A model generated the notes under the pieces. That model was not told the origin of the DNA. It did not search any database and saw nothing but the letters and a program-made list of their open reading frames with translations. A program made the translations under genes and the position numbers. Shown one piece after another: positions 1,701 to 53,640 of a DNA stretch of 64,000 nucleotides (position 1 is its first letter; every line of letters starts with the position of its first letter). Origin of the DNA: Mobula hypostoma (taxonomy: Eukaryota); assembly GCF_963921235.1 (NCBI RefSeq), contig NC_086125.1, forward strand, positions 7,936,001 through 8,000,000, read 5' to 3'.

Positions 1701-2749
1701 CGATTTAAGTAGGGAGTGCTTAGAGAAAGAGTTGCATTTATGGGTTACAGTGATTAAGGGGCACATTGCACAGAGTCAGAAACAGAATGAGAAGGTCTCA
1801 GGATAGAGAGTACTCTCTGAAGTCAAGGAGAGTCAGAGAATAGACAATATCTAGAGATGGAAGGTAGCTTACAAGGCACCTGAAAACAGGATTAACTACA
1901 TGCAGGGAGAGAGAGGCCAGCAAGTGCATTTAAACACAGAAAGGACAGTATAAATCTGGCATTTCATCCAGTTTTAATGAACTACGTGAATGAGTTCTGA
2001 GCTGTGCTGTTTGAGCCTTACCTCATTTCCCCTGATGTAGAAGTTCCAACCAAACTTAGAAAGAGAATCATTGTGGGAGAAACCACCTACGTACCACTGA
2101 TCACCTTCAGAGAATCTCCAAATTATAGAGCAGAGTTTGCACCAATCCAGACCTCAATCCATCCATGTTCAACAAAAGCCAGACTTGAAGGATTCAGAAT
2201 GCAAGTTGAAGGAAGTTGTGGAGAAGTGGACGGGCACATTTAAGGTTCAATGTACTGTATTACAGAGAGATAATGCAGACGCGCATGGTGAAAGATGGAA
2301 TGAGAGTGGGACTTGCCCATGACATCCAGGGAAAACTGGCATATTAGATTCTGAACTGGCACGTGTGGATGATGAAGTGGTTGGTTTTGTGGTTGGAAGC
2401 TTGTGACCTGTGGTATACCACAGGAATCGCTGCTGGCATTCCTACCTTCTGCTATAAGTATGAACTTGGAGGTGAATGCAGTTGGTTAGTGTGCAGATGA
2501 GACGAATGTTGACTGTTTTGTTGACAGGAGTGTTATTGGCTGCTGGATGATATTGATGAGTTGGTAATGTGGGCAGAGCCATGACTGATGGAATTTAATC
2601 TCAGTTGGCATGAACACAGTGGCCAATGGGAACATCTCTGTGTTGTGTCACTCTGTGACCAACTTACTACTGAACAGGACAAGGGCCATGACTACTTTCA
2701 AGGCAATCCAGGAGTAACAGATTTTAACTGGAGGACGTGACTCAACAAA

Positions 2750-3460
2750 GAACTTAATGTGGCTGAGTTGATGAAGACCAGAGACTGGTGTCTAGAGAGA
2801 TTGATGGGGGTAGTGCAGTGGATGTTGTCTCCATGGATTTTAGTAAGGAATTTGACCAAGTCTCTCATGGGAGGCTAATCCAGGAGATTAAGATGCATGG
2901 GGTCCACAGCAAATTGGCTGTTTGGATTCAGAACTGGCTTTCCCATAGAATTCAGAGGGTAGTGGTTGAAGAGACTTATTTGAACTGGAGGTCTGTGTGT
3001 GGTGGAGTTCCGCAGGGATCTGTGCCCAGTATTACTCTGATTAGGCCACATCTGGAGAATTACCTACCGTTCTGGTTGCCCCACGATATGAAGGATGTTG
3101 AGGCTTTGAAGAGGCTGCAGAAGAGGTTTACCAGGATGCTGCCTGGTTCAGAGGGCATGTGCTATCAAGACAGGCTGGATAAACTTGGGTTGCTTTTACT
3201 GGATTGCCCACGGCTAAGGGGTAGTCTGATAGAGAAGTACAAGAGAGGCAGACATAGGGTGGACAAACAGTATCTGTTTTCCGGGGTTGAAACATCTAGT
3301 GCCAGACGGGTGGCATTGAATGTGAGAGGGGACAGGTTCCAGGTGGATGTGAGGGGTCAGTTTTTACACAGAGTGGTGAATGCCTGGTATGGTGGTAGAT
3401 GCAAATACATTAGAGGTTTTGAAGAGACGTTTGAATAGGCACATGGATGTAAGGAAGATG
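2750..3460 (+). mobile_element. CR1-type LINE 3' fragment
   Basis: ORF 2788-3438 has VDVVSMDFSKEFDQVSHGRL, WIQNWL, GVPQGS, LIRPHLE and LQKRFTRMLPG. Confidence 0.85.
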
Positions 3461-5884: not shown

Positions 5885-6717
5885 TGTCATGTGATTGGCA
5901 ACAATGAATATATTGAGTCAGGATTTATAAACAAACAAACATTTATTAAACCCTGATAAACAATGAAAAAGAAAACGAAAACCCTAACCGGAAGTAAACG
6001 GCAATGCGGCCATTCGGTAAGTCACTACTCAGTACTAGTTCTTAAAGCGATAAATTCAAACACAGTTCTTTGAATGGTAAATTTTAAAGTCCAAGAGATT
6101 TATGCAGTCAATTATGAGAGACTTCCATGAAGTAACGAGTTCCTCGCAGACATGACATCACTGCCACTCCCAGTCGGATCCTGCCTTTTCCACAGGATTC
6201 ATGATGACGGAAATAAAACAGTTTTAAAGGCACTGACCTTTCTCCTTCGTAGAATAAATCTTGCACAGCCTTTCTGCCACTTTTAGCAGAGGCTATCTCA
6301 TGCAGATCACTCTTTCTTGAACGAATTCAATAATGGTCGATCCTTTCCAAACCCGTCAAACGTCTCCTTCAGGGTCCCGTCTTCACTCTCCAATGTTACT
6401 GAAAAGATACTTTAACAAACCGGGCAGTGATTGTCAGACTGCCGGTCCAGACTTCTGTACCTTACATTAGAACATAAAACTCCATTTAAAATCAAAACTG
6501 CGTCATACTGCAAATACACAGCGGAGCGGAGTATCTCCTTGACTTTCTAACTGGAAAACTAACTGCATCACCAGGGGTCTTCCCCTTTTATACCTGTGGT
6601 GAACATGTCATCACGTAACCTCACATCGGCAGGAAAATTACATCAGGTGACCTCCAAAAAAAAATCATTACATCATTCTCACAAGAAAGTCACAAGATCT
6701 CCTAGAGGTATGTAACA
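5885..6717 (-). repeat. Complete 3' LTR (833 bp) of the Gmr1-type element
   Basis: Begins TGTTACA at 6717 directly after the purine tract ttttttttggtgggagg; 6582-6717 matches 9447-9584. Confidence 0.85.
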
Positions 6718-6914
6718 CCTCCCACCAAAAAAAATTGGTCTCTTAAAGAACAAAATTTTAACAATTGACAATTTACAAAAAAAATACAAAGGTATAAAAT
6801 TTACAATGTACACAATATACACAGTATTATCTTTCAGCATTTTACAAACTAATATACAGTAGGAGTCTTACAAATGTTAAAATACCACTCCATAAAAAAA
6901 ATTACATTGTACAT

Positions 6915-8200
6915 TTAACATCTAGATAGACAATCAGCAATTACATTATCTTTACCTTTAATATGAGTGGTCAAAATATTGTACTCCCGTAACATTAAAC
7001 TCCAATTTAGTAATCTTCTATTTTTGTTTTTCATCTTACTCAAAAGCACTAACGGATTATGATTGGTATAAACTGTGAGTGGTTTATGAGTAGTACTGAC
7101 ATACACTTTAAAATGTTGTAAAGCCAAAACAAGAGATAATAATTCCTTTTCTATTGTTGAATAATTTCTTTGATGGACATGAAATTTCTTAGAAAAATAA
7201 GCTACCGGACGATCAACTTCATCACCCTCATCTCTTTGAAGTAACACTGCTTCTGCAGCTTCATCACTAGCATCTACAGCTAATGAAAATGGTTTTTCAA
7301 AGTCAGGAGATTTGAGCACAGGTTGAAAACATACAATAGTTTTGAATTTATCAAAGGCCTCTTGATAAAGCTCTGTCCAAACAAATTTTTCATTTTTCTT
7401 CAAGAGGTTAGTTAATAGAAGAGCAATGTTCGCAAAATCCTTACAAAATTTTCTGTAATATCCTATCATACCCAAGAATCTTCTGAGAGTTTTTCTACCA
7501 GTTGGACTGGGTACTTCTAAAATTGCCTGAACTTTCGCCTGAACAGGTGCTAATTTTCCCTGACCCACAACATAATCAAGGTAGGTCACTGTGGCATGAC
7601 CAAATTCACTTTTAGCTAAGTTAATAGTTAAGTTAGCTTTTGAAAGTCTTTCAAATAGTTTCTCCACCACCGCAGTACTATGTGTTTTCCATGTATTATT
7701 TCCCGTAACTAAATAATCAATATAGGCATCTGTATCTTTTATCCCATGAATCACCTTATTAATCATCCTCTGGAAAGTACCTGGTGCATTCTTCATCCCA
7801 AATGGAAGAACATTATATTCATATAACCCAGATGGAGTTACAAATGCAGAAACCTCCCTACCTCTATCCATCAATGGAACACACCAAAAACCTTTTAACA
7901 AATCAATCTTTGTAAGGAACTTGGCTTGTCCAACCTTATCCACACAATCATCTACCCTAGGGACTGGTTATGCATCAGTCTTTGTCACAGCATTCACCTT
8001 CCTGTAATCTGTACAAAACCTAATACTATTGTCTGGCTTAGGCACCATAACACATAGTGAACTCCCATTCGAATTTGAAGGTCCAGTAATATTATTCTCT
8101 AACATATACTTAATTTCTTGTTCAGCAAGTTCACATTTTCCCTATTCATTCTATATGGATGTTGTTTTATAGGCTTTGAATCTCCCACATCTACATGATG
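6915..8200 (-). pseudogene. Gypsy RT + RNase H (disrupted)
   Basis: PIKQHPYRMN, KIDLLKGFW, PFGMKNAPGTFQR, AYIDYLV (degenerate YxDD), VDASD, YSTIEKELL, YTNHNPL. Confidence 0.92.
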
Positions 8201-8456
8201 TGTAGCTATGGTGGTTCTTCTAGGAACATCTTGAAATAAATCCCTGTATTTAAAAATTAATTGTTTCATCTGCTCTCTCTGCTCTGGCTGGCAATGAGCT
8301 AATTTTTCATCAATATTTTCCAGAACTTCTGAGTTTGGTAATCCAGCTGAAATAACGTTGGGTTTAAAATGAATTTCAGATGAATCATCCATTAAGTTTT
8401 CAGTGGGATCAAATTCATTATTATTGACCACAACAGTCATAGTAGCATTTTGTTTC

Positions 8457-9440
8457 TCATAATACAGTTTTATCATATTTATATGACACAGCTGTGTTGG
8501 TTTTCTTCAATCTGGAGTTTTTAATCACGTAATCTACATCATTTACTTGGGATTTAATCTCATAAGGACCATGAAATTTAGCTTGTAATGGGTTTGTTTG
8601 CACTAGGAAAAGAACCAACACTTTATCTCCAGGTTTAAATGACCTCATCCTAGCTTCCTTATCATACCAAGTCTTCATCTTTTCTTGAATTGATTTTAAA
8701 TTTTCTTTGGCCAACCTACAAACTTTATGTAATCTTTCTTTAAATTTTAAAACATAATCCAGCAAATTAGTGTGTACCTCTTTATTAATCCACTGTTCCT
8801 TCAACAAGGCCAAAGGTCCTCGAACTCTGTGCCCAAACACAAGTTAAAAAGGACTAAAACCTAATGATTCCTGCACTGCCTCTCGTACTGCAAAAAGTAA
8901 TAAATGTACGCCTTCATCCCAATCCTTTTCATTTTCCACACAATATGTCCTCATCATATTTTTAAGGGTAGAATTTAATCTCTCCAAGGCTCCTTGTGAT
9001 TCTGGATGATATGCAGATGAGGCAATCTGTTTTGCTCCCAGTTTATAAACTATCTGCTGAAACAATCCAGACATAAAATTACTACCTTGATCCGATTGTA
9101 TTTCCTTAGGCAACCCAAAATAAGTGAAGAATTTTATAAGAACCTTTTTCACAGTTTTGGCTGTTATATTCCTAAGAGGTACTGCCTCTGGAAACCTAGA
9201 CTCTGTGCACATAATAGTTAATAAATATTGATGTCTAATTTTAGCTTTTGGCAAAGGACCTACACAGTCTACAATGATTTTTGAGAATGGCTCACCAAAT
9301 GCTGGAACTGGTTGCAGTGGGGCCACTGGAGTAACCTGATTAGGTTTACCCACAAGTTGACATGTATGACACGTTCTACAAAATGTCGCTACATCTTTTC
9401 TTAAACTAGGCCAGTAAAAATGTTCAGAAACCTTGTTCAT
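8457..9440 (-). pseudogene. Gypsy integrase (HHCC remnant, catalytic core, GPY/F module)
   Basis: FYWPSLRKDV..CRTCHTCQ, DCVGPLP, SDQGSNF, HPESQGALER, FKPGDKVLV..FHGPYEI. Confidence 0.92.
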
Positions 9441-9446
9441 AGTTTT

Positions 9447-9584
9447 CTTCCCTTTTTATACCCATGGTGAACATGTCATCACATGACCTCACATCGGCAG
9501 GAAATTACCTCAGGTGATCTCCAAAAAAAACCCATTACATCATTCTCACAAGAAAGTCACAAGATCTCCTTGAGGGACGTAACA
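9447..9584 (-). repeat. Truncated 5' LTR (first ~138 bp)
   Basis: Near-identical to 6582-6717; fused directly to the integrase coding sequence. Confidence 0.85.
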
Positions 9585-32400: not shown

Positions 32401-35400
32401 CACAGGGCTCATATGTCCAAGGATAAGCTAGCTTGTTTTTATTGCCATATAAATCTTGTTTGTGATAGATGTAATTCTGAGGTAGCTTCCTTGACATATA
32501 TGTTCTGGTCTTGTTCTCTTCCAGAAAAATATTGGAAAGATATTTTTGATATTATTTCAGTAGTTCTGCGTATTGACTTACAACCTCATCCTATTACTGC
32601 AATTTTTGGACTACCAGTGATAGACTCTAGTCATTTATACTTGTCAGCTTGTCGTCTAATTGCATTTGTTACATTAATAGCCAGAAGATCCATTATATTT
32701 AAATAGAAAGATTCTAATCCCCCCACTACATTTCAATGGTTTTACCAAACGATAGCATGCCTAAACTTGGAAAAAATTAGGAGTGGTACTATGGATCCTT
32801 TGGTTAAATTTGAAGAAACTTAGAGGCCATTTATTCAATATTTTCACATGATGTAAGTTGACCCTTTCTGGATCCTTTGCAGTAAGATTTTTGTTCATGA
32901 ATAGAGGAGTGGAGTTAACGACAAATAATAATTTTAGCTGATGTGGTATGACAGCCCCTGCTTTGTTTGTTTTTTTTTTAGTTTAGTTTTTTTTTCAGTT
33001 TAGGGGGCTTTCTTTTTCTTTAATTATAAAATATCTTTTTCATGGTCAGATACTATGAGATTGGGAGGTTAAACTATATTTGTTACTTGGAATCTGTGCT
33101 TGTACATGCTAATTGTTACTATTGTAATCCCAATCTCTATATATCATTACTATTCCTGTTATGTTTAATTTTGAAACTTAATAAAAAGATTGAAAAAGAA
33201 AGGATTTAAAGCCCAAGATACAAGAGAGGGATTGAACCTCCAATCTCCCAACTCGAGGCAGGAGCACCATCCGACGAGCAACACACCGTCTGGTGTGGAG
33301 AGAGATTGTACACCTTTGCTTATCCTGGGCACGTCATAACTCTCAGCATTTACTCGTGATCACACAGGGATGATATCTCTGCTCTGAAAGGGTTAATTAT
33401 TTATTTTCTCACCATGCACTGCGACCAAGGTAACTTACTGACCTTCCACCTTGATTTCCACTTGCTTCTCATCTGTTCCAAGTTTGTTCCTGGCTCTACA
33501 CTTGTAAATTCCTTGATGTTCTGATGTTGCCTGGGGAATGTGGAGAACCCCAGGAAGGTCGGTTTCCCCTGCGACTCCCTGACCGGGTCTTTCCCACGTC
33601 AGTGTTACCTGGGGGTTTCCACTGGAGTCACAGGTGATTGTAACTTCATCATCTACTCTGATGAAGACTGAAAACCCGGACACGGTTTTGTTATTTACTG
33701 ATATAGTTGTGTTTTGTGGTTTATCTGGAAAAGAGTGAAAAGAGTGAAATTAACCAGCCCCTCCCATAGGACATAGAACAGTACAGCACAGGGTGGGCCC
33801 TTTGTCCCATGATGTTGTACCAACCTTTATAAACCTATTCCATCGACAACCCAACCCCTCCCTCCTGCACAGCCCATCGTCCTCCATTCTTCTTTTATTC
33901 ACGTGCCTATCTAAGTCTCTTAAATGTCCCTTATATATCCGTCTCAACACCCACCCCTGACAGTGCAGTCCAGACACTTCCTACTGACTATGTAAAAACT
34001 TGCCTCTGACTCCGTGGCTCATCATAAAAGGATGTCCTCTGCTATAGTCATTACCCCCGGGGAATTACGTGCTGGCTGTCCACTCTTCCTACGTCTCTTA
34101 CAATCTTACACAATCATCCTCCTTGGCTCCAAAGAGCTCACTCAACCTTTCCACAGAAGACATGCTCTCTAATCCAGTTAGCGTCCTGGTAAATCTCCCC
34201 TGCACCATTTCTAAAGCTTCTTCATTTTTCCTATAATGAGGTGACTGGACATCACTACACTGTGACTCCAAAAGGCTGGAAAATCGAATTTGACTGTGTG
34301 CTGAGCTCACTTGTGCCTGGCAGCTCATTCCACACTGTCACAACTCCTCTGAGTGAAGAATGTTCCCCTCATGTTGACCTTAAACTTCTCAGCTTTCACC
34401 CCTACCTCATGACTTCTGGTTGTGACCCACCCAACCTCAATGGAAAAAGCCTGCTTACATTTACTCTAACAATACCCCTCATAATTTTGTATACCTCTAT
34501 ACAATTCTTCTCAATCGTCTACATTTAAGGAATAAACTCCTAGTAATAAATAAAGGTATTTATTACAGCATTTTTCCTTCCTGGAGTCTATAACTATTTT
34601 ACCTGATTTAGTAATCAATGATATCTATTAACCCCATCACGTTACTGCACTGAAAACACTTTAAACCATTTTTGATAATGTTGTTCACATTGTAAATCCA
34701 TGCGTGTATTTCAATATTTATGTAAGTTTTATTCCACATTCATGCTTTAAAATTTATTTTTATATAATTCTCTGTAAGTGTTGAATGTTGTGTATTTTGT
34801 CACAGTCACACACTCACCAACACACCAGAGCAAATCCCTAATCCATATTGTGTATATGGTGAATGAAATTGATCCCTGATAATCTCAGTGCAAAACTATG
34901 ATGGCACCCAACAGATATTTTTCAGAAGATTATCACCAATTTAGACACGCGACCCCCAAAGGGATTTGGCACCCCTCACTTAGGCTGACTTTACTGTGGT
35001 GTTCTGAGGAGGTCCCACATTGGCACTGTCACATTGGGGTGCTGGGAACGGACCCAAATGCAAGACACAGACTCTGAAGTACACGGAACAGGACTGGACT
35101 GGAGTAGGGACGTGACAGGATACAGGCAAGGAGCAGGGACAAGAACGCAGACTTGGGCTAGGGAAAGCGGGACCAGGACTAGGAACCATGGACTAGGTGA
35201 CAAGGCTTGGACTGCGAGCCTGAGACTGGACAAGGACCCAGAACCTAGGTCTTGCCTCGGGCTCGGACCCCAGAACCGGGCAAGGACATGACATAGGTGC
35301 TCCCGATGTGGCCTTTTATATATTGGCGAGACCCGACGCAGACTGGGAGACCGCTTTGCCGAACACCTACGCTCTGTCCGCCAGAGAAAGCAGGCCACAC

Positions 35401-45480: not shown

Positions 45481-47098
45481 GTGGATTCAGAGATTCGAAG
45501 TACATTTATTATCGAAGTACTTATGCAGTGTACAACTCTTGAGATTCATCGTCCGCGCAGACAGCCACGAAATAAAGAAAACCGTGGAACCCGTTCAGAG
45601 AAAAATATCAACCGCCCCACGAGCAGAATAAAAAAAAACAAATTGCGCAAATGTAACAAATAAAAGAGCGAAAAATACAGAAATTGAAACGCACAATTAA
45701 GAGTCCAGGCATATTCAGGTCAGCTGTGTTGGCTATCTGCAAGCTGCCCCAATTCAAAAACGCCCAAAGTAGCAAGAAAAAAAAAGCGGTGACCAGAAAC
45801 CACAACGTCAAGATGATGAAAGTCATTATAAGGCGATGAGAGGCATTGATCGTGTGGATAGTCAGAGGCTTTTTCCCAGGGCTGAAATGGTTGCCACAAG
45901 AGGACACAGGTTTATGGCGCTGGGGAGTGGGTACAGAGGAAATGTCAGGGGTAAGTTTTTTTTACTCAAAGAGTGGTGAGCGCGTGGAATGGGCTACCGG
46001 CACCGGTGATGGAGGCAGATACGATAAGGTCTTTTAAGAGACTTTTGTTTAGCTTAGATAACTAGAGGGCTATGGGTAAGCCTAGTAATTTCTATGGTAG
46101 GGACATGTTCGGCACAACTTTGTGGGCCGAACGGCCTGTATTGTGCTGTAGGTTTTCTATGTTTCTATGTTTCAACTACAGAGTCCAGTCCATAAACCGG
46201 AACTCCGGCACCATTCTCCGACTGGATCGAGGGTGAAAGAGAGAGACGGTCACACGCAAACAATTTCCTCGGGCGGCAAAGAGCAAGAGGCCGGTAGACT
46301 GGGCTGAACATCTGCAAGATTTGACAAACTTCAGTAGATGTGTAATGGAGAGTGGTGACTGGCTGCATCAATGCCTTTGAACGAGAACATCAATGCCCTT
46401 GGACGAGAATCCTCCAGAAAGTAGTCGCTACTTCCCAGTACATCACAGGTAAAGCCGTCCCCACCACTGAGCACATCTACATGAAATGTTGTCAGAGGAA
46501 AGCAGCATCCATCATCCTGGACCTCTAGTAACCAGGACATGCTCTCTTCTCACTGTTGTCATCAGGAAAAAAAGGTACAGGAGCCTCAGGACTCACACCA
46601 CCATGTTCAGGAACTGTTATTACCCCTCAACCATCAGGCTTTTGAACCAGAGGGAATAACTTCACTTGCCCCATCATTGTAATGTAAACACAACCAATGG
46701 ACTCACTTTCCAGGACTCTTCATCTCATGTTCTCGATATTTATTGCTTATTTATTTATTACTATTATTACTTCTTTTCTTCTTCTTTTTGTATTTGCACA
46801 ATTTGCTGTCTTTTGGTCATCATTTGAACTCCCAAGCTGGTGTAGTCTTCACTGATTCTGTTTTGGTTATTATTCTAACGATGTATTGAGTATGCCCACA
46901 AAGAAATGAATCTCTGGGTTGTACATGTTGTCATATATGTACTTTGACAATAAATTTTACTTTGAACTTTGCTCAACTTTTCCATCTTGGCTGGCCCAGT
47001 TAATCGCTCCCGTACTAGTCTTGTTTTTCCAGGCGCTTTGGTTTCCTTCCACAGTCCAAACAAATACCGATGGTAGAGTCATTCTAAATTGTTCAAAC

Positions 47099-47960
47099 TG
47101 TTACGTACCCCGTAACTGGGTTGCCAAACCAGCAGAAATGGATCACTCAGTTGGAGTCTGGATTACTAGAACTAAGAAAGTTTTATTAAAGAAACAAGCA
47201 ACACAGTAATCGAAAGGATAATAAATGCAACAGTTCAGCAATGATAACCACACATGTGCACAGAATTAAGATAACAGCATCAATCAAGCTCTATCGTTGT
47301 CTAGGGGTAAATGACCAAATTTCAAAGTGACTCAAAGTTCAGTCGAGTTTAGTAGTTCAGTTCGCAGTAATCGTTGCCATGGCAATGGACAACATGGGGG
47401 AAGAGAGAGAGGGAACAGGAACAACTGATCATTCAGACATGGCTTCACTCACAGACCGGCGAGATGGCTCACAAGCAACTTTTGGGCGGGTCCTTGGTGA
47501 TGTCACCTGAGGTCACCGACTGTGACCCCCTCCTCCAGATGTGGTCGATCCTCTGCAGCGAACCCGGCACCCAGGCAAGGGCGGACACACACCAGGTTCC
47601 CGCTGATCGTACCTTTCCACCCTGGCCGTTGTCTGGTACTTCCCACCGACTCGTGAGAAGCGTACCGCTTCCAGGGTCTCGCTACCTCGGGTGGCGTGTG
47701 TCCTGCCTTAGCGAACCTGTCCCTTTTTATCCCCCTGCTGGGGTATCGCCTGTCCATCACTTCAAACAGTTCAAGGTTCAAAGGGGGGAGCCGCTCCAGA
47801 CAGCTCTCTCTCCCCCGTCCCTTCATTACACATCTCCAGACGTTGCTCCATTGTTCCTTATCTCTCCTTCCCCTGAGGGCAGGTGGCAGACCACTTGCTG
47901 ATGTCACTGATGCTAGCCCAGGCCAGCAAACATCTTAATTTTATGTGTATTCTCGTCACA
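47099..47960 (-). mobile_element. Solo LTR (862 bp) inserted into a SINE-derived tandem array
   Basis: TGTTAC..GTCACA termini; TSD aaac/gaac; AATAAA on the minus strand near 47185. Confidence 0.82.
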
Positions 47961-48540
47961 GAACACACACCGGTGGTAGGGTCATCGTAAATTGTCCAAA
48001 CACACACCGGTGGTAGGGTCATTGTAAATTGTCCAAACACACACCGGTGGTAGAGTCAAGTCATCGTAAATTGTCCAAACACACACCGGTGGTAGGGTCA
48101 TTGTAAATTGTCCAAACACACACCGGTGGTAGAGTCAAGTCATCGTAAATTGTCCAAACACACACCGGTGGTAGGGTCATTGTAAATTGTCCAAACACAC
48201 ACCGGTGGTAGAGTCATTGTAAATTGTCCAAACACACACCGGTGGTAGAGTCATTGTAAATTGTCCAAACACACACCGGTGGTAGAGTCATTGTAAATTG
48301 TCCAAACACACACCGGTGGTAGAGTCATTGTAAATTGTCCAAACACATACTAGTGGTAGAGTCATTGTAAATTGTCCAAACACACACCGGTGGTAGGGTC
48401 ATTGTAAATTGTCCAAACACACACCGGTGGTACAGTCATTGTAAATTGTCCAAACACACACCGGTGGTAGAGTCAAGTCATCGTAAATTGTCCAAACACA
48501 CACCAGTGGTAGGGTAATTGGTCATTGTAAATTGTCCCAT
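47961..48540. repeat. 37/42-bp minisatellite, ~15 copies, derived from a V-SINE internal segment
   Basis: Unit cacacaccggtggtagggtcattgtaaattgtccaaa; the array resolves into an ordinary SINE 3' end at 48520-48630. Confidence 0.92.
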
Positions 48541-49471
48541 GATTAGTCTGGAGTTAAATTGGGGGTTGCTGTATGGTGTGACTCGAAGGCCTTAAAGGAC
48601 TACTCCACACTGTATCTCAATCAATAAATATATATACATATTAAACATTTAGATGATAATGTGGTAAAGTAGATCAGCAAATTTGTGGTTGACACCAAGA
48701 TACTGGACATCAAAGTATGCAGTGTGATCTGGACCAGTTGGAAAAATGGACTGAGAAGTGGGAGATGGAATTTAATGCAGACAAGTGTGAGGTGTTGCAC
48801 GTTGGGAGGACAAACCAGAATAGGACTTACACAGTGAGGAGTGTACAAGAAACGGATCAGCAAATTATCGGATTGATAATTCCTAGAAAGTGGCATCACA
48901 AGTACATGGGGTCGTAAAGTGATCTCTTGGCTCAATGGCCTTCGTAAATCAGAGCACTGAGTATAGTAGTTTGGATGTTATATTAAAATTGTAGAAGAAC
49001 ATAGAACATAGACATAGACATCTACAGCATGTTACAGGCCATTCGGTCCACAATGTTATGCCAACCATTTAACCTAGTCTAGAAACTGCCTAGAATTTCC
49101 TACCACATAACCCTCTACTTTTCTAAGCTCCGTGTACATATCTAAGAGGCTCTTAAAAGACCCTGTTGTATCAGCTTCCACCACTGCCGCTGGCAGTGCA
49201 TTCCACACACCCATCACTCTGTGTGGAAAAACTTACCCCTGACAACCCCCCTGTAGCTACTCCCAAGCACCTTAAAACTACGTCCTGTTGTGTTAGCCAT
49301 TTCAGCCCTGGAGAAAGCCTCTGGATGTCCACATGATCAATGCCTCTCACCAACTTATTCACCTCTATCAAGTCACCTCTCATCCTCCGTCACTCCAAGG
49401 AGAAAAGGCAAGTTCACTCAATCTATTCTCATATGGCATGCTCTCCAAATCCAGGCAACATCCTTGTGAAT

Positions 49472-52328
49472 TGTCATGATCCAGTCCATAAAGCCCACAT
49501 TCTGGTTCACAGTCCGGTCCGTCGTTACCTTATTTCGGGGTTTTCCTATTTTCCCTTGTTCCATTGGGTGCCTTAATTGAGGCACCTGATTCTCATCATG
49601 GGCTGGCACATAAATACCTCTCAAACCAAGGATTCTCTGCTGGACTGTTCCCTTCCCCATCCCCAACAGTTACCTCACCTGCCACTTTGTCAGAATCCTT
49701 GTCAAGTATCCTCGGCAGTCATCCCAGCCCTGCGTCCTAAAAAGGGTCCTGGCCCTGCATCCTGGAAAGTATCCCAGCCCTGCATCCTAGAAGAGTCCTG
49801 GTGTCTCTGAGCCCAAGTAGGAGTTCCGGGCTCTGTACCCTAGAGCCTAGCTCAGCCAAGTCCAAGGGCCGAGCCAAATCTAGTTCAAGAAACACGTCCT
49901 GTGCTGGAGTCTCCTCGTCCTGTGGTGGAGTTCCCTGGCCCAGCCCAAGAGTTCCCTTGCCCAGCCTTGTGCTGGAGATCCCTCGTCCAGTCCAGGAGTC
50001 TCTCGTCTAATCCAAGCCACGTCCAAGTACCACGTCAGGTCCCAGTCCAGGCTTTGTATTCCCAGTACTATCTAGTGTCTATGTCATGGTCCAGTCCATG
50101 AAATCCGTATTCCGGTTCAAGGTCCGGTCCATCGACTCTTCCTCTAGGTTTTCCTATCTACCCTGTTTCTGTCCTTGTTGAGCTAATTGAGGCAGCTGAT
50201 GCTATTTGGGGCTGGCTGCATAAATACCTTCAGAGACCAGGGCGTGGCTGCTAGATTGTTCTTGTTTTTACTCCTTGGATCGCGCTCGTAACCCAGATCC
50301 AGGCGAGGACTTGGGACTAGGAACAGACTAGACTGTCATAAGGGCGGTGGCTGGGAACGGACCCAAGTTCAAGACACTTGCTGTCTGGTCCTGGAGCCAC
50401 CCTATACCTAGCTCCCTTCCTGTCCCTTGCCTCCGCCCAGGTAAGCCAGGCCGTCTTGCCATTACCTGGGGTTGGTTCTGTCCCTTCCTGTCTCTTTCCT
50501 CTGTCGGGTGGTGAACCGCGCCCTGGCCAGGAGTACTGCGCCCTGCCCAGGAGAACCGCACCCTGCCCAGGAGGAGCCAAGCCTCGCCTCAAGTCTCAAG
50601 TCTCCAGCCTCCTGCCAAGCCTCACCTCGCCTCGTCTCCTGCCTCCAGCCTCCAGCCTCGCCTCACCTCAAGTCTCCTGCCTCCAGCCTCTAGCCTCGCC
50701 TCGCCTCAAGTCTCCTGCCTCCAGCCTCTTGCTAAGCTAAGCCAAGTCTCTAGCCTCTAGCCTCAAGCTTCAAGCCTGTAGATTTCTGCCTCATCCTGCC
50801 TGCCTGCCAAGCCTCATCCTTGCCTAGTTCTGGGGTCCGAGCTAGAGGCAAGACCCAGGAACTGGGTCTTTGACCAGTCTCTGGCTAGGAGTCCAAGCCC
50901 GGACTCCGAGCTCTTTTGTCTTGAACTTGGGTCCGTTCCCAGCCACCGCCCTTATGACAGTCTAGTCTGTTCCTAGTCCCAAGTCCTCGCCTGGATCTGG
51001 GTTACGAGCGCGATTCAAGACCCATGTTCCGGGTCCCTGTCCAGTCTCTGGCTCAGAGTCCTAGTCCAAGCTCCTAGTTCCAAGTTCCTTGTCCAGGTCC
51101 CACTTTCCTAGTCTTAGTCCTAGCCCAGGCCCTGTGTCTTTATCTCGTCCAGGGCCAGTGGCCATGGCAGGCATCATTTCTTCCCGACTTCCCTTGCATT
51201 CTTGATAATCTTAAGTCCCGTTCCTAGTACTTCAGTGTCTGTGTCTTGCATCTGGGTCCACTCCCATCGCCACCCCTTGTAAAAGAACAGTCCAGTCATA
51301 CATGGACCCAGCAACGCAGACAATGTCATTTAATTCTCACCATCCTGGGTTCCCTCCTGTTGAATCCCACCCCCCCCCCCCACATACACATACACCTAGG
51401 TCGTCCATAGTCTGGGAAAGCCTGTTAGGTCGCCAGGAGGATCCCATAGTGGGGGGTGGAGTACTGTCATGGTCTGGTCCCTGAGGTCTGCATTCCAGTT
51501 CACGGTCCGGTCCGTCGATTCCTTATTCCGGGTTTTCCTGTTTCCTGTTCCATTGGGTGCCTTAATTGAGGCACCTGATTCTCGTTTTGGGCTGGCACAT
51601 AAATGCCTCTCAAACCAAGGATCCCGTCCTGGACTGTTCCCTTCCCCTCCCTTCCAAATCCCCGATGGTTACCTTGCCTGCTACCTTTGTCAAGTATCCT
51701 TGGCAGTGACCTCGTTAAATATCCTCAGCAGTTACTTTGGCAAATATCCTGGGCAGTCATCCCGGCCCTGCGTCCTGGAAAGCATCCTGGCCCTGCATCC
51801 TAGAAGGGTCCCAGTGGCTCCGAGCCCAAGTAGGAGTCCCAGCTCAGTACCCTAGAGCCTAACCCAGCCAAGTCCAAGAGCCGAGCCAAATCTAGTTCAA
51901 GAGCCATGTCCTGTGCTGGAGTTCTCTCGCCCAGCCCAGGAGTCTCTCGTCTAGTCCAAGCCACGGCCTAGTACCTTGTCCAGTCCCAGTCCAGTACTAT
52001 CTAGTGTCTAGTCTGTTCCTAGTCCCGAGTCCTCACCTGGATCTGGGTTCCGAGCCTGATTCAAGAGCCATGTTCCGGGTCCCTGTCCAGTCTCTGGCTC
52101 AGAATCCTAGTCCAGGCTCCTAGTTCCAAGTTCGTCGTCCAGATCCCACTTTCCTAGTCTTAGTCCTAGCCCAGGCCCTGTGTCCTTGTCTCATCCAGGG
52201 CCTGTGTCCATGGCAGGCGTCGTTTCTTCCCGACTTCCCTTGCATTCTTGGTAATCTTAGTCCAGCTCCTAGTCCTTCAGTGTCTGTGTCTTGCATTTGG
52301 GTCCACTCCCATCATCCCCCTTGTAACA
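49472..52328 (+). mobile_element. Non-autonomous LTR retrotransposon (LTRs 49472-51284 and 51465-52328, 180-bp interior) inserted in a CR1 fragment
   Basis: Two homologous LTRs; TSD tgaat/taaat; PBS-position GAACAGTCCAG; gag-like MDPA start; PPT tggggggtggagtac. Confidence 0.88.
50082..50959 (+). mobile_element. Related solo LTR nested in the 5' LTR
   Basis: TGTCATGG..TATGACA with a perfect 5-bp TSD gtcta (50077-50081 and 50960-50964). Confidence 0.88.
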
Positions 52329-53640
52329 TAAATCTCCTCTGCACTCTGTCCATAGCATCCACATCCTTCCTGCAGTGAGGTGACCAGTACTCCAAGTGGG
52401 GTCTAATTAAGGTTTTAGATAAATGCAACATTACCTCACAGCTTTTGAATTCAATCTCATGGTTGATGAAGGTCAACACACCATACGACTTCTTAACAAC
52501 ACAGTCAACCAGCACAGTTTTGAGCGTCCTATGGACACGATCCCAAGATTTCTCTGATCCTCCACATTGCCAAGAGTCTTACCATTAATATACTATATTC
52601 TGTCTTCAAAGTTGACCTACCAAAATGAACCACCTCACACTTATCTGTCTTGAACTCCACCTGCCACTTCTCAGCCCAGTTCTGCATCCTATTGGTGTCC
52701 CACTGTAACCTCTGACAATCCTTCAGACTATCCACAACACCCCCAGCTTTCGTGGCATCAGCAAACTTACTAACACACCCTTCTACTTCCTCATCCAGGC
52801 CATTTATAGAAATCACAAAGAGGAGGGGCCCCAGAACAGATCCCTGCAAAACTCCTCTGATCATCGACCTTCATGCAGAATACGAACCATCTACAACCAC
52901 TCTGCCTTCTGTGGGCATGCCAATTCTCAATCCACAAAGCAAGGTCTCCTTGGATCCCATGCCTGCTTACTTTCTGAATTAACCTCACATGGGGAAGTTT
53001 ATCAAATGCCTTACTGAAATCCATATATATGATATCCACTGCTCTACCTTCATCAGGATTTTGGTGAGACCAAATTTGGAGCATTATATGGGGTTCTGGT
53101 CACCAGCTATGGAAAGATAGCACTAAGCTTGATAGAGTTCAGAGAAAATTTTCAAGGATATTGCCAGGACTTGAGGACCTGATTTATAGGGAGAGTTGAA
53201 TAGGTTCAGACTTTATTTTTTGGAATGAGGGAGAAAGAGGGGAGATCTTATAGAAGTAAATAAAATAATAGGAGATACAGATAGGGTGAATGCATACAGA
53301 CTTTTTTCTAAGACTGGAGGTCATACATCAGGGGTTCGCAACCTGGGGTCTACAGACTCCTTGCCTAATGGTATTGGTCTGTGGCACGAAAACAGTTGGG
53401 AACTCATGTCACCGAGTGAAAGATCCACCTGAGGGAGAACTTCTTCACTCAGAGGGTGTTGGGAATGTGCAACAAGCTGCCAGTGGAAATAGTAGATGCA
53501 GGTTCAATTGTAATATTTAGGAGAAGTTTAGATAGGTATTGGAGGGGTATAGAGGGGTATATGGCTGGGGGTAGATGGGATGAGGCCAACATGGACTAGA
53601 AGGGCCAAAGGGCCTGTTTCTGTGCTGTAGTGCTCAACGG
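52329..53640. mobile_element. CR1 LINE fragments in both orientations
   Basis: GVLQGSVLGPLLF, SKFADATK, MDFSKAFDKLPH, LIRPHLEY on minus; a CR1 3' end on plus. Confidence 0.75.

What the first reader, a model, noticed from the sequence alone, without database searches (positions are those of the whole stretch)
49472..52328. Non-autonomous LTR element keeping Tf1/sushi-type self-priming complementarity
The 11 nt right after the 5' LTR (GAACAGTCCAG, 51285-51295) are the exact reverse complement of CTGGACTGTTC inside both LTRs (49640-49650, 51629-51639). That site lies ~30 nt downstream of a TATA-like ataaat(a), the expected transcript 5' end. An 11-nt 5'-end/PBS duplex is how Tf1 primes reverse transcription without tRNA. 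The interior is only 180 bp (PBS, MDPA gag stub, PPT), so this looks like a parasite of a self-priming Gypsy. The nested LTR has CTAGATTGTTC at the same position (50251-50261), predicting a covarying PBS GAACAATCTAG.
Basis: partly seen in the sequence, partly recalled or inferred. Interest (0 to 1): 0.76.

Follow-up and report, generated by a model that had tools for sequence, protein, structure and literature searches.

The report
Gene-less self-priming LTR retroelement relic
This is an old, dead, protein-less jumping-gene copy in a cartilaginous-fish-like genome whose RNA looks built to start its own reverse copying by pairing with itself, as yeast Tf1 and fish sushi elements do; it is a tidy example of a known mechanism, not a new one.

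Summary
GAACAGTCCAG (51285-51295) abuts the 5' LTR and is the perfect reverse complement of CTGGACTGTTC in both LTRs (49640, 51629). Each site lies 30 nt after an ATAAAT box. Chance expectation is about 6e-4 for that position.

The element is a real insertion:
- LTRs of 864-930 bp with TG..CA ends, 85.6% identical.
- A 5-bp target duplication (TGAAT/TAAAT), confirmed through the reading frame of the LINE it split.
- A G-rich polypurine tract and a 180-bp interior with no recognisable coding.
- A related solo LTR (50082-50959, duplication GTCTA) nested in the 5' LTR.

New here: a 20-bp U5-leader stem (51236-51260 with 51303-51322, z = -2.9) holds the primer site in a loop. Its U5 arm is the best-conserved block among four related LTRs. 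Together with the 11-bp helix this resembles the Tf1 "pretzel".

Not shown:
- The transcription start.
- That no host tRNA matches the site.
- A parent Gypsy element.
- That the short interior is a family trait. No other copy could be fetched, so covariation is untested.

The "gag stub" is unsupported, and no poly(A) signal lies downstream of the site.

This scan has already noted at least 14 similar self-priming LTR elements elsewhere in this genome. Verdict: a new member of a known kind, of modest interest.

The parts
49467..49471 (+). Left target-site duplication, TGAAT
   Evidence: It matches 52329-52333 at 4 of 5 positions. The split LINE reading frame (RVQRRF|TRMLPG) requires ATTCA on the minus strand.
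49472..50081 (+). 5' LTR, first part (U3 and start of R-U5), up to the nested insertion
   Evidence: Aligns to 51465-52005 of the 3' LTR.
49610..49616 (+). TATA-like ATAAATA in the 5' LTR. It is also the only poly(A)-signal-like hexamer (CATAAA) in the LTR.
49640..49650 (+). Putative self-primer CTGGACTGTTC in the 5' LTR (predicted first 11 nt of the RNA)
   Evidence: Exact reverse complement of 51285-51295. It is the only intermolecular helix in the cofold of the two natural fragments.
50082..50959 (+). Nested solo LTR of a related subfamily (TGTCATGG...CTTATGACA), flanked by the 5-bp duplication GTCTA (50077-50081 and 50960-50964). It carries ATAAATA at 50220 and the variant site CTAGATTGTTC at 50251-50261.
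   Evidence: The empty site is seen in the 3' LTR at 51995-52020. Its start and end align to the host LTR.
50274..50376 (-). Inverted 103-bp copy, inside the nested LTR, of the nested LTR's own 3' end plus 60 nt of flanking host LTR (50917-51019), 99% complementary
   Evidence: (inverted repeat I1).
50960..51284 (+). 5' LTR, second part (U5 end). It ends TGTAAAA where the 3' LTR has TGTAACA.
   Evidence: 91.6% identical to 52006-52326.
51236..51260 (+). U5 arm of the U5-leader stem
   Evidence: Pairs with 51303-51322 in the minimum-free-energy and centroid folds (z = -2.86). It is the most conserved block in four related LTRs: 16 of 25 columns invariant against 44 of 160 elsewhere, p = 5e-4.
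51285..51295 (+). Primer-binding site GAACAGTCCAG, directly after the 5' LTR
51285..51464 (+). Whole interior, 180 bp: primer site, leader arm, a 60-aa ORF with no known domain, a C12/(ACAT)n low-complexity run, and the polypurine tract
   Evidence: There is no other copy in the window.
51303..51322 (+). Leader arm of the U5-leader stem. It overlaps the ATG at 51302.
51448..51461 (+). Polypurine-tract-like run AGTGGGGGGTGGAG, 3 nt before the 3' LTR
51465..52328 (+). 3' LTR, 864 bp (TGTCATGG...CTTGTAACA). It carries ATAAATG at 51599 and CTGGACTGTTC at 51629-51639.
52329..52333 (+). Right target-site duplication, TAAAT (one G-to-A change)

Best explanation
This is a decayed copy of a gene-less LTR retroelement: LTR, 180 bp, LTR. 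It inserted into a LINE with a 5-bp target duplication and was later hit in its 5' LTR by a solo LTR of a sister subfamily.

Its cis signals are those of Tf1/sushi-type self-priming rather than tRNA priming. Transcription would start about 30 nt after the ATAAAT box. The first 11 nt of the RNA (CUGGACUGUUC) would fold back over roughly 650-700 nt of R-U5 and pair with the 11 nt directly after the LTR. A U5-leader stem would hold that site in a loop. The RNase H of a helper element's reverse transcriptase would cut after nt 11, and the 11-mer would prime minus-strand synthesis. The G-rich tract before the 3' LTR would prime the plus strand. Proteins must come in trans from an autonomous self-priming Gypsy element.

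Shown: the anatomy, the exact complementarity and its position, and the second helix with its conservation. Inferred: the start site, the cleavage, the helper, and that the mini format is what transposed.
For: - Exact 11-nt complement at the canonical primer-site position and at TATA+30 in both LTRs. The empirical chance rate is 6e-4 per position.
- It is 11 nt long, the same as in Tf1, where the first 11 bases pair with the primer site and RNase H cuts between bases 11 and 12 (PMC7175516).
- It is the only intermolecular helix when the natural R-start and U5-end/leader fragments are cofolded.
- A 20-bp U5-leader stem brackets the primer site (z = -2.86, 1 of 200 shuffles fold as well). Its U5 arm is the best-conserved LTR block (p = 5e-4). 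This fits the three-duplex 'pretzel' required for Tf1 self-priming (PMC10085805).
- The primer site does not start with TGG. The nearest TGG is 18 nt from the LTR.
- The 5-bp target duplication is confirmed by the split LINE reading frame, and a polypurine tract sits next to the 3' LTR.
- Self-priming is documented for the Tf1/sushi group from yeast to vertebrates (PMC6317226, PMC4600332).
- Leads only, not checked: at least 14 earlier notes of self-priming LTR elements in this genome, mostly miniature ones of about 2.1-2.5 kb.
Against: - No transcription-start data.
- The primer and its site are about 650-700 nt apart (1.6 kb in this copy because of the nested LTR), far more than I recall for Tf1.
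- No AATAAA-like hexamer lies between the site and the LTR end, so R and the poly(A) site are undefined. The ATAAAT box could itself be the poly(A) signal.
- Only one of the two flanking pretzel duplexes is clear. The U5-end duplex is marginal (p = 0.02-0.04, at non-equivalent positions).
- There is only one copy with a primer site in the window, so there is no covariation.
- No autonomous partner and no family copies were retrievable.
- The host tRNA set was not available.
Confidence: 0.72

Rival explanations
1. It uses the same self-priming signals, but this is a one-off. A full-length self-priming Gypsy element inserted here and later lost its whole coding region through an internal deletion, so there is no amplifying non-autonomous family.
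For: - The target duplication is equally compatible with a deletion after insertion.
- No second copy with this 180-bp interior is in the window, and none was found in any collection I could search.
- The middle of the interior is a low-complexity C12/(ACAT)n run that could mark a repair junction.
Against: - Earlier, unchecked notes of this scan list several two-LTR elements of about 2.1-2.5 kb with self-priming signatures in the same genome. One has a 172-bp interior and lies 180 kb away.
- The deletion would have had to spare exactly the primer site, the leader stem arm and the polypurine tract.
Confidence: 0.18
2. The ATAAAT box is the poly(A) signal rather than, or as well as, the TATA box. 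CTGGACTGTTC then marks the R/U5 border, not the RNA 5' end. Any priming would use an internal segment of the leader, or the helix would serve another role such as genome folding, dimerisation or packaging.
For: - CATAAA at 49609 and 51598 is the only poly(A)-signal-like hexamer in either LTR, and none lies downstream of the site.
- A poly(A) cleavage site 10-30 nt after the hexamer would fall on the site.
- First readers noted other Gypsy elements in this genome whose leader pairs with the LTR poly(A) signal (unchecked).
Against: - Only about 138 nt of LTR lie upstream of the box to hold a promoter and R.
- U5 would then be about 700 nt, which is unusually long.
- The 11-nt length and the exact abutment to the LTR are the Tf1 pattern.
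- The three LTRs keep the 30-31-nt spacing typical of TATA-to-start distance.
Confidence: 0.12
3. The complementarity is fortuitous, or a by-product of local inverted duplication. The real primer is a host tRNA or tRNA fragment.
For: - This locus does show template-switch-like inverted duplication: 50274-50376 against 50917-51019 at 99%.
- The host tRNA repertoire could not be examined, and there is no tRNA in the window.
Against: - The chance rate is 6e-4, or about 1e-5 with the TATA spacing.
- The site is present in both LTRs, so it predates insertion.
- No TGG follows the LTR directly.
- If the TGG at 51303 were read as a tRNA 3'-end complement, it would imply U at the nearly invariant C61 position. 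This rests on my own knowledge of tRNA structure.
Confidence: 0.04

Closest known systems
Tf1/Tf2 of Schizosaccharomyces pombe (also Tj1 and Tosmo elements)
   Same: - An 11-nt self-primer pairs with a primer site just after the 5' LTR.
- An extra helix lies between a sequence next to the primer site and U5, giving a crossing 'pretzel' topology.
- TG..CA LTR ends.
- A 5-bp target duplication. That Tf1 makes 5-bp duplications is my own knowledge.
   Different: - No gag or pol at all.
- LTRs of about 0.9 kb, with the primer and its site about 650-700 nt apart.
- Only one flanking duplex is clear.
- The host is a vertebrate.
- No experimental evidence.
sushi-ichi and other vertebrate Tf1/sushi chromoviruses (Butler et al. 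2001, as cited in PMC10085805 and PMC6317226)
   Same: It is a vertebrate LTR element predicted to self-prime through complementarity between the RNA 5' end and the primer site.
   Different: Those are autonomous chromoviruses classified by their RT and integrase. This element has no coding sequence, so clade membership cannot be tested.
TRIM, SMART and LARD non-autonomous LTR retrotransposons
   Same: Two LTRs flank a short non-coding interior that keeps only a primer site and a polypurine tract, and the element depends on a helper.
   Different: - TRIMs are under 1 kb, with 100-250-bp repeats and a tRNA-complementary primer site (PMC6934838).
- This element is about 2 kb, has 0.9-kb LTRs and a self-complementary primer site.
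- LARDs have long interiors.

Membership tests
LTR retrotransposon (structural definition) | Two direct LTRs with TG...CA termini | tested here: met
   TGTCATG...TGTAACA in the 3' LTR. The 5' LTR ends TGTAAAA, a one-base change. The pair is 85.6% identical.
LTR retrotransposon (structural definition) | Target-site duplication of 4-6 bp | tested here: met
   TGAAT/TAAAT match at 4 of 5 positions. The original ATTCA is implied by the split LINE codons RRF|TRM and by intact copies of that motif at 3118, 18055 and 61447.
LTR retrotransposon (structural definition) | Polypurine tract next to the 3' LTR | tested here: met
   AGTGGGGGGTGGAG at 51448-51461, 3 nt before the LTR.
Tf1/sushi-type self-priming elements | The sequence directly after the 5' LTR complements about 11 nt inside the LTR, downstream of the promoter | tested here: met
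   Exact over 11 of 11 nt, abutting the LTR, with the site 30 nt after ATAAAT in both LTRs.
Tf1/sushi-type self-priming elements | The complementary LTR segment is the very 5' end of the transcript | not testable with these tools
   Only the TATA-like spacing supports it. There are no RNA data, and no poly(A) signal lies downstream.
Tf1/sushi-type self-priming elements | Three-duplex 'pretzel': two more helices between sequences next to the primer site and LTR sequence (PMC10085805) | tested here: inconclusive
   The helix on the downstream side is found: 51303-51322 with 51236-51260, z = -2.86, and conserved. The helix on the upstream side is only marginal (p = 0.02-0.04).
Tf1/sushi-type self-priming elements | No primer site complementary to a tRNA 3' end | tested here: inconclusive
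   No TGG at the LTR border and no tRNA gene in the window. The host tRNA set was not available.
Tf1/sushi clade of chromoviruses (Ty3/Gypsy) | RT, RNase H and integrase group within the clade, and the integrase carries a chromodomain | not testable with these tools
   The element has no coding sequence. The interior ORF has no Pfam match and no relatives.
TRIM | Total length under 1 kb, terminal repeats of 100-250 bp, tRNA-type primer site (PMC6934838) | tested here: not met
   The LTRs are 864 and about 930 bp, the element is about 2 kb without the nested LTR, and the primer site is self-complementary.
Non-autonomous (amplifying) family | Several copies share the short interior and have different target duplications | not tested
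   The window has no second copy. External searches were empty. Only unchecked earlier notes point that way.

The most novel reading that the evidence does not exclude
Rays carry an amplified family of gene-less, roughly 2-kb 'all-LTR' elements that transpose by Tf1-type self-priming across an unusually long R-U5 (about 0.7 kb). Sister subfamilies would have co-varying self-primer and primer-site pairs: CTGGACTGTTC with GAACAGTCCAG, against CTAGATTGTTC with GAACAATCTAG. That would be the first natural covariation evidence for self-priming in vertebrates, and the first described non-autonomous parasites of self-priming Gypsy elements.
Probability: 0.35. Interest if true: 0.45.

Novelty: new member of a known kind. 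Interest (0 to 1): 0.27.

Why it matters
Self-priming of reverse transcription is established for Tf1 and predicted for sushi-type elements. I found no description of a gene-less derivative that keeps only these cis signals; the animal TRIM paper I read (PMC6934838) defines TRIMs by a tRNA-type primer site and could propose no priming mechanism for its own elements. Such derivatives would mark out the minimal cis requirements: the 11-nt primer, the primer site, the U5-leader stem and the polypurine tract. If the family has many copies in subfamilies, it would give a natural covariation test of the mechanism in a vertebrate. As a single decayed copy it adds little beyond annotation. The same class has already been noted many times in this genome by this scan.

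Tried and rejected
- **Protein word search with the ORF across the LTR-end/primer-site/interior junction (51228-51410).** No candidate.
- **The same search with the 128-aa ORF over the LTR start and R site (51469-51855).** 19 candidates, none significant. Family copies therefore could not be fetched through called ORFs.
- **Exact-pattern scans of public contigs.** The U3 box plus TATA was scanned against metagenome and viral contigs, and the conserved U5 block against metagenome contigs. All gave zero hits. These collections probably hold no ray DNA, so the blanks say nothing about copy number.
- **The 2309-2324(-) match to the LTR start.** Rejected as a chance match.
- **The related LTR at 35027-35293(-).** It lacks U3 and the R site and has no interior, so it is no use for covariation.
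- **Rfam scan of 47-55 kb.** Nothing meaningful.
- **Minus-strand orientation of the element.** Rejected: there is no purine tract or primer-like sequence at the corresponding borders (read directly).
- **The big HMMER representative search.** Not used. A stub of 30 aa or less could not reach significance, and the operators flagged the cost.
- **Original Tf1 papers (PMC1369541, PMC109269, PMC230564).** Not held.
- **A note on method.** To measure LTR-LTR distance, one search left the nested LTR out of the 5' LTR string inside a script. The temporary file was deleted. RNA folds used natural contiguous fragments only.

Full report
**Observation**

GAACAGTCCAG occupies 51285-51295. Its reverse complement CTGGACTGTTC occurs only at 49640-49650 and 51629-51639 in the whole window.

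The complementarity is exactly 11 nt and cannot be extended on either side. ATAAAT boxes start at 49610 and 51599, 30 nt before the two sites. The nested LTR has ATAAAT at 50220 and the variant CTAGATTGTTC at 50251, 31 nt later.

Outside the element, 37 of 61,093 positions (6e-4) start an 11-mer whose reverse complement lies in the 3' LTR. A match at the one position that abuts the LTR is therefore unlikely by chance. Requiring it also to fall at TATA+30 brings the figure to roughly 1e-5.

**Anatomy**

- **3' LTR.** 51465-52328, 864 bp, TGTCATGG...CTTGTAACA.
- **5' LTR.** 49472-51284, ending CTTGTAAAA. It is interrupted by an 878-bp insert at 50082-50959.
- **Nested insert.** It begins TGTCATGG and ends CTTATGACA. 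It aligns at both ends to the host LTR. It is flanked by GTCTA on both sides, whereas the 3' LTR has a single GTCTA at the empty site (51995-52020). It is a solo LTR of a sister subfamily.
- **LTR divergence.** With the insert set aside, the two host LTRs are 85.6% identical (K2P 0.16). They also differ in the copy number of internal 21-26-nt repeats. This is an old copy.
- **Target duplication.** The element sits in a minus-strand LINE, within the conserved reverse-transcriptase C-terminal motif RVQRRF|TRMLPG. Three other LINE copies in the window show the uninterrupted motif and its DNA. The original target must therefore have read ATTCA on the minus strand. That gives a 5-bp duplication TGAAT (49467-49471) / TAAAT (52329-52333) with one later G-to-A change.
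- **Polypurine tract.** A G-rich purine run AGTGGGGGGTGGAG (51448-51461) lies 3 nt before the 3' LTR.
- **Orientation.** The opposite orientation gives neither a purine tract nor a primer-like border, so the plus strand is the sense strand.
- **Interior.** It is 180 bp. Its 60-aa ORF (starting MDPA) has no Pfam match. A word search with the overlapping junction ORF (a different reading frame) found nothing. Calling it a gag stub is unsupported.

**Structure around the primer site**

I cofolded the natural R-start fragment (from either LTR) with the natural U5-end/leader fragment. The 11-bp helix was the only intermolecular pairing.

The contiguous stretch 51228-51330 folds into a 20-bp interrupted stem (8+3+9 bp) between U5 (51236-51260) and the leader (51303-51322). 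This leaves the U5 end and the primer site in a 42-nt loop. The fold has z = -2.86, and only 1 of 200 dinucleotide shuffles folds as well.

The U5 arm is the best-conserved block among the four related LTR ends in the window: host 5', host 3', nested, and the truncated LTR at 35027-35293. It has 16 of 25 invariant columns against 44 of 160 elsewhere (p = 5e-4).

A helix between a sequence downstream of the primer site and U5, together with the primer/primer-site helix, is a crossing topology. The literature describes this for Tf1 as a three-duplex "pretzel", in which the two outer duplexes join sequences next to the primer site to LTR sequences downstream of the self-primer (PMC10085805). The third duplex, which involves the last 20 nt of U5, is only marginal here (p = 0.02-0.04, at non-equivalent positions).

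**Mechanism proposed**

Transcription would start about 30 nt after the ATAAAT box. Nucleotides 1-11 would pair with the primer site. A helper element's RNase H would cut after nt 11, as shown for Tf1 (PMC7175516), and the 11-mer would prime minus-strand DNA. The purine tract would prime the plus strand. All proteins would be supplied in trans.

Only the anatomy and the pairings are shown here. The start site, the cleavage and the helper are inferred.

**What argues against it, or remains open**

- There are no RNA data.
- The primer and its site are about 650-700 nt apart (from the 3' LTR geometry), much farther than I recall for Tf1.
- There is no AATAAA-like hexamer anywhere between the site and the LTR end in either LTR. 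The only candidate is the CATAAA within the presumed TATA box. An alternative is therefore that the site marks the R/U5 border rather than the RNA 5' end.
- The primer site does not begin with TGG and the window has no tRNA gene. I could not examine the host tRNA set.
- The three 11-mers staying intact at this divergence is not remarkable. My own estimate, taking about 8% change per copy, is roughly a 6% chance. No selection after insertion is implied.

**Family context**

- **No second copy here.** No second copy of the interior or of a primer site exists in the window.
- **Other related LTRs.** The nested LTR is solo. The related LTR at 35027-35293(-) lacks U3/R and sits at a breakpoint of the segmental duplication.
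- **Outside copies.** All attempts to fetch copies from outside the window failed.
- **What stays untested.** The covariation test and the choice between family trait and one-off deletion could not be run.
- **Earlier notes of this scan (unchecked leads).**
  - At least 14 findings of self-priming LTR elements, most of them miniature, lie elsewhere in this genome.
  - One is an "LTR-172 bp-LTR" element 180 kb upstream of this window.
  - One claims compensatory changes.
  - One reports giant LTRs with the two sites 1.2-1.7 kb apart.
  - Follow-up agents judged the ones they examined to be known Tf1/sushi-type priming.
  - The notes also call the genome a ray; I did not verify the species.

**Comparison with what is known**

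Self-priming is documented experimentally for Tf1. It is predicted for the Tf1/sushi group in fungi, vertebrates and non-seed plants (PMC6317226, PMC4600332, PMC10085805).

This element works like that group, but it cannot be filed in the clade because it has no RT or integrase. It is not a TRIM in the strict sense: its LTRs are about 0.9 kb, it is about 2 kb in total, and it has no tRNA-type primer site (PMC6934838). I found no paper that describes a non-autonomous derivative of a self-priming element. That absence, in a library that holds only part of the literature, is weak evidence of novelty.

**Verdict**

This is a new member of a known kind, already seen repeatedly by this scan in the same genome. 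Interest is modest (0.27).

Noticed in passing
window 50274-50376 and 50917-51019: Inside the nested solo LTR lies a 103-bp inverted copy, 99% complementary, of that LTR's own 3' end (43 nt) plus the adjoining 60 nt of host LTR. It is a local fold-back or template-switch duplication made after the nested insertion, or possibly an assembly artefact.
   Followed up: partly
window 6400-9584, minus strand: A truncated Gypsy element with integrase (9440-8457) upstream of RT-RNase H (about 8100-6915). The ORF ends right after the RNase H motif and is followed by a purine tract and an LTR starting TGTTACA at 6717. A 140-bp U3 fragment of the same LTR at 9584-9446 abuts the integrase directly. Having integrase before RT is the Gmr1-type domain order (PMC8220671).
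   Followed up: partly
window 35027-35293, minus strand: A roughly 267-bp internally deleted relative of the same LTR family (TGTCATG joined to the last 260 bp, ending TGTGACA). It sits exactly where the two copies of the 14-27 kb / 33-40 kb segmental duplication stop matching. No clear target duplication is visible.
   Followed up: partly
window 47906-48534: A 37/42-bp tandem satellite of about 16 units (GTCCAAACACACACCGGTGGTAGAGTCATTGTAAATT...), 1 kb upstream of the element, with a lone diverged unit at 47054.
   Followed up: no
window 49699-49999 and 51687-51943: The two LTRs differ in the copy number of internal short tandem repeats. The 25-nt unit TTGTCAAGTATCCTYGGCAGT is present once in one LTR and three times in the other, and a 21-26-nt unit four times against once. 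This accounts for most of the gaps between the LTRs.
   Followed up: partly
window 49100-49471 and 52329-52700, minus strand: The host of the insertion is a decayed LINE reverse-transcriptase C-terminal region (…RPHLEYWSPHCRKDVDAMDRVQRRF | TRMLPG…LESMPYENRLSEL) with frameshifts. Similar motifs occur at 3118(+), 18055(+) and 61447(-).
   Followed up: partly
window 51640-52328 and 49651-51284: No AATAAA-like poly(A) hexamer occurs in the 650-700 nt of LTR downstream of the putative start site in either LTR. Where transcripts of this family end is unexplained.
   Followed up: partly
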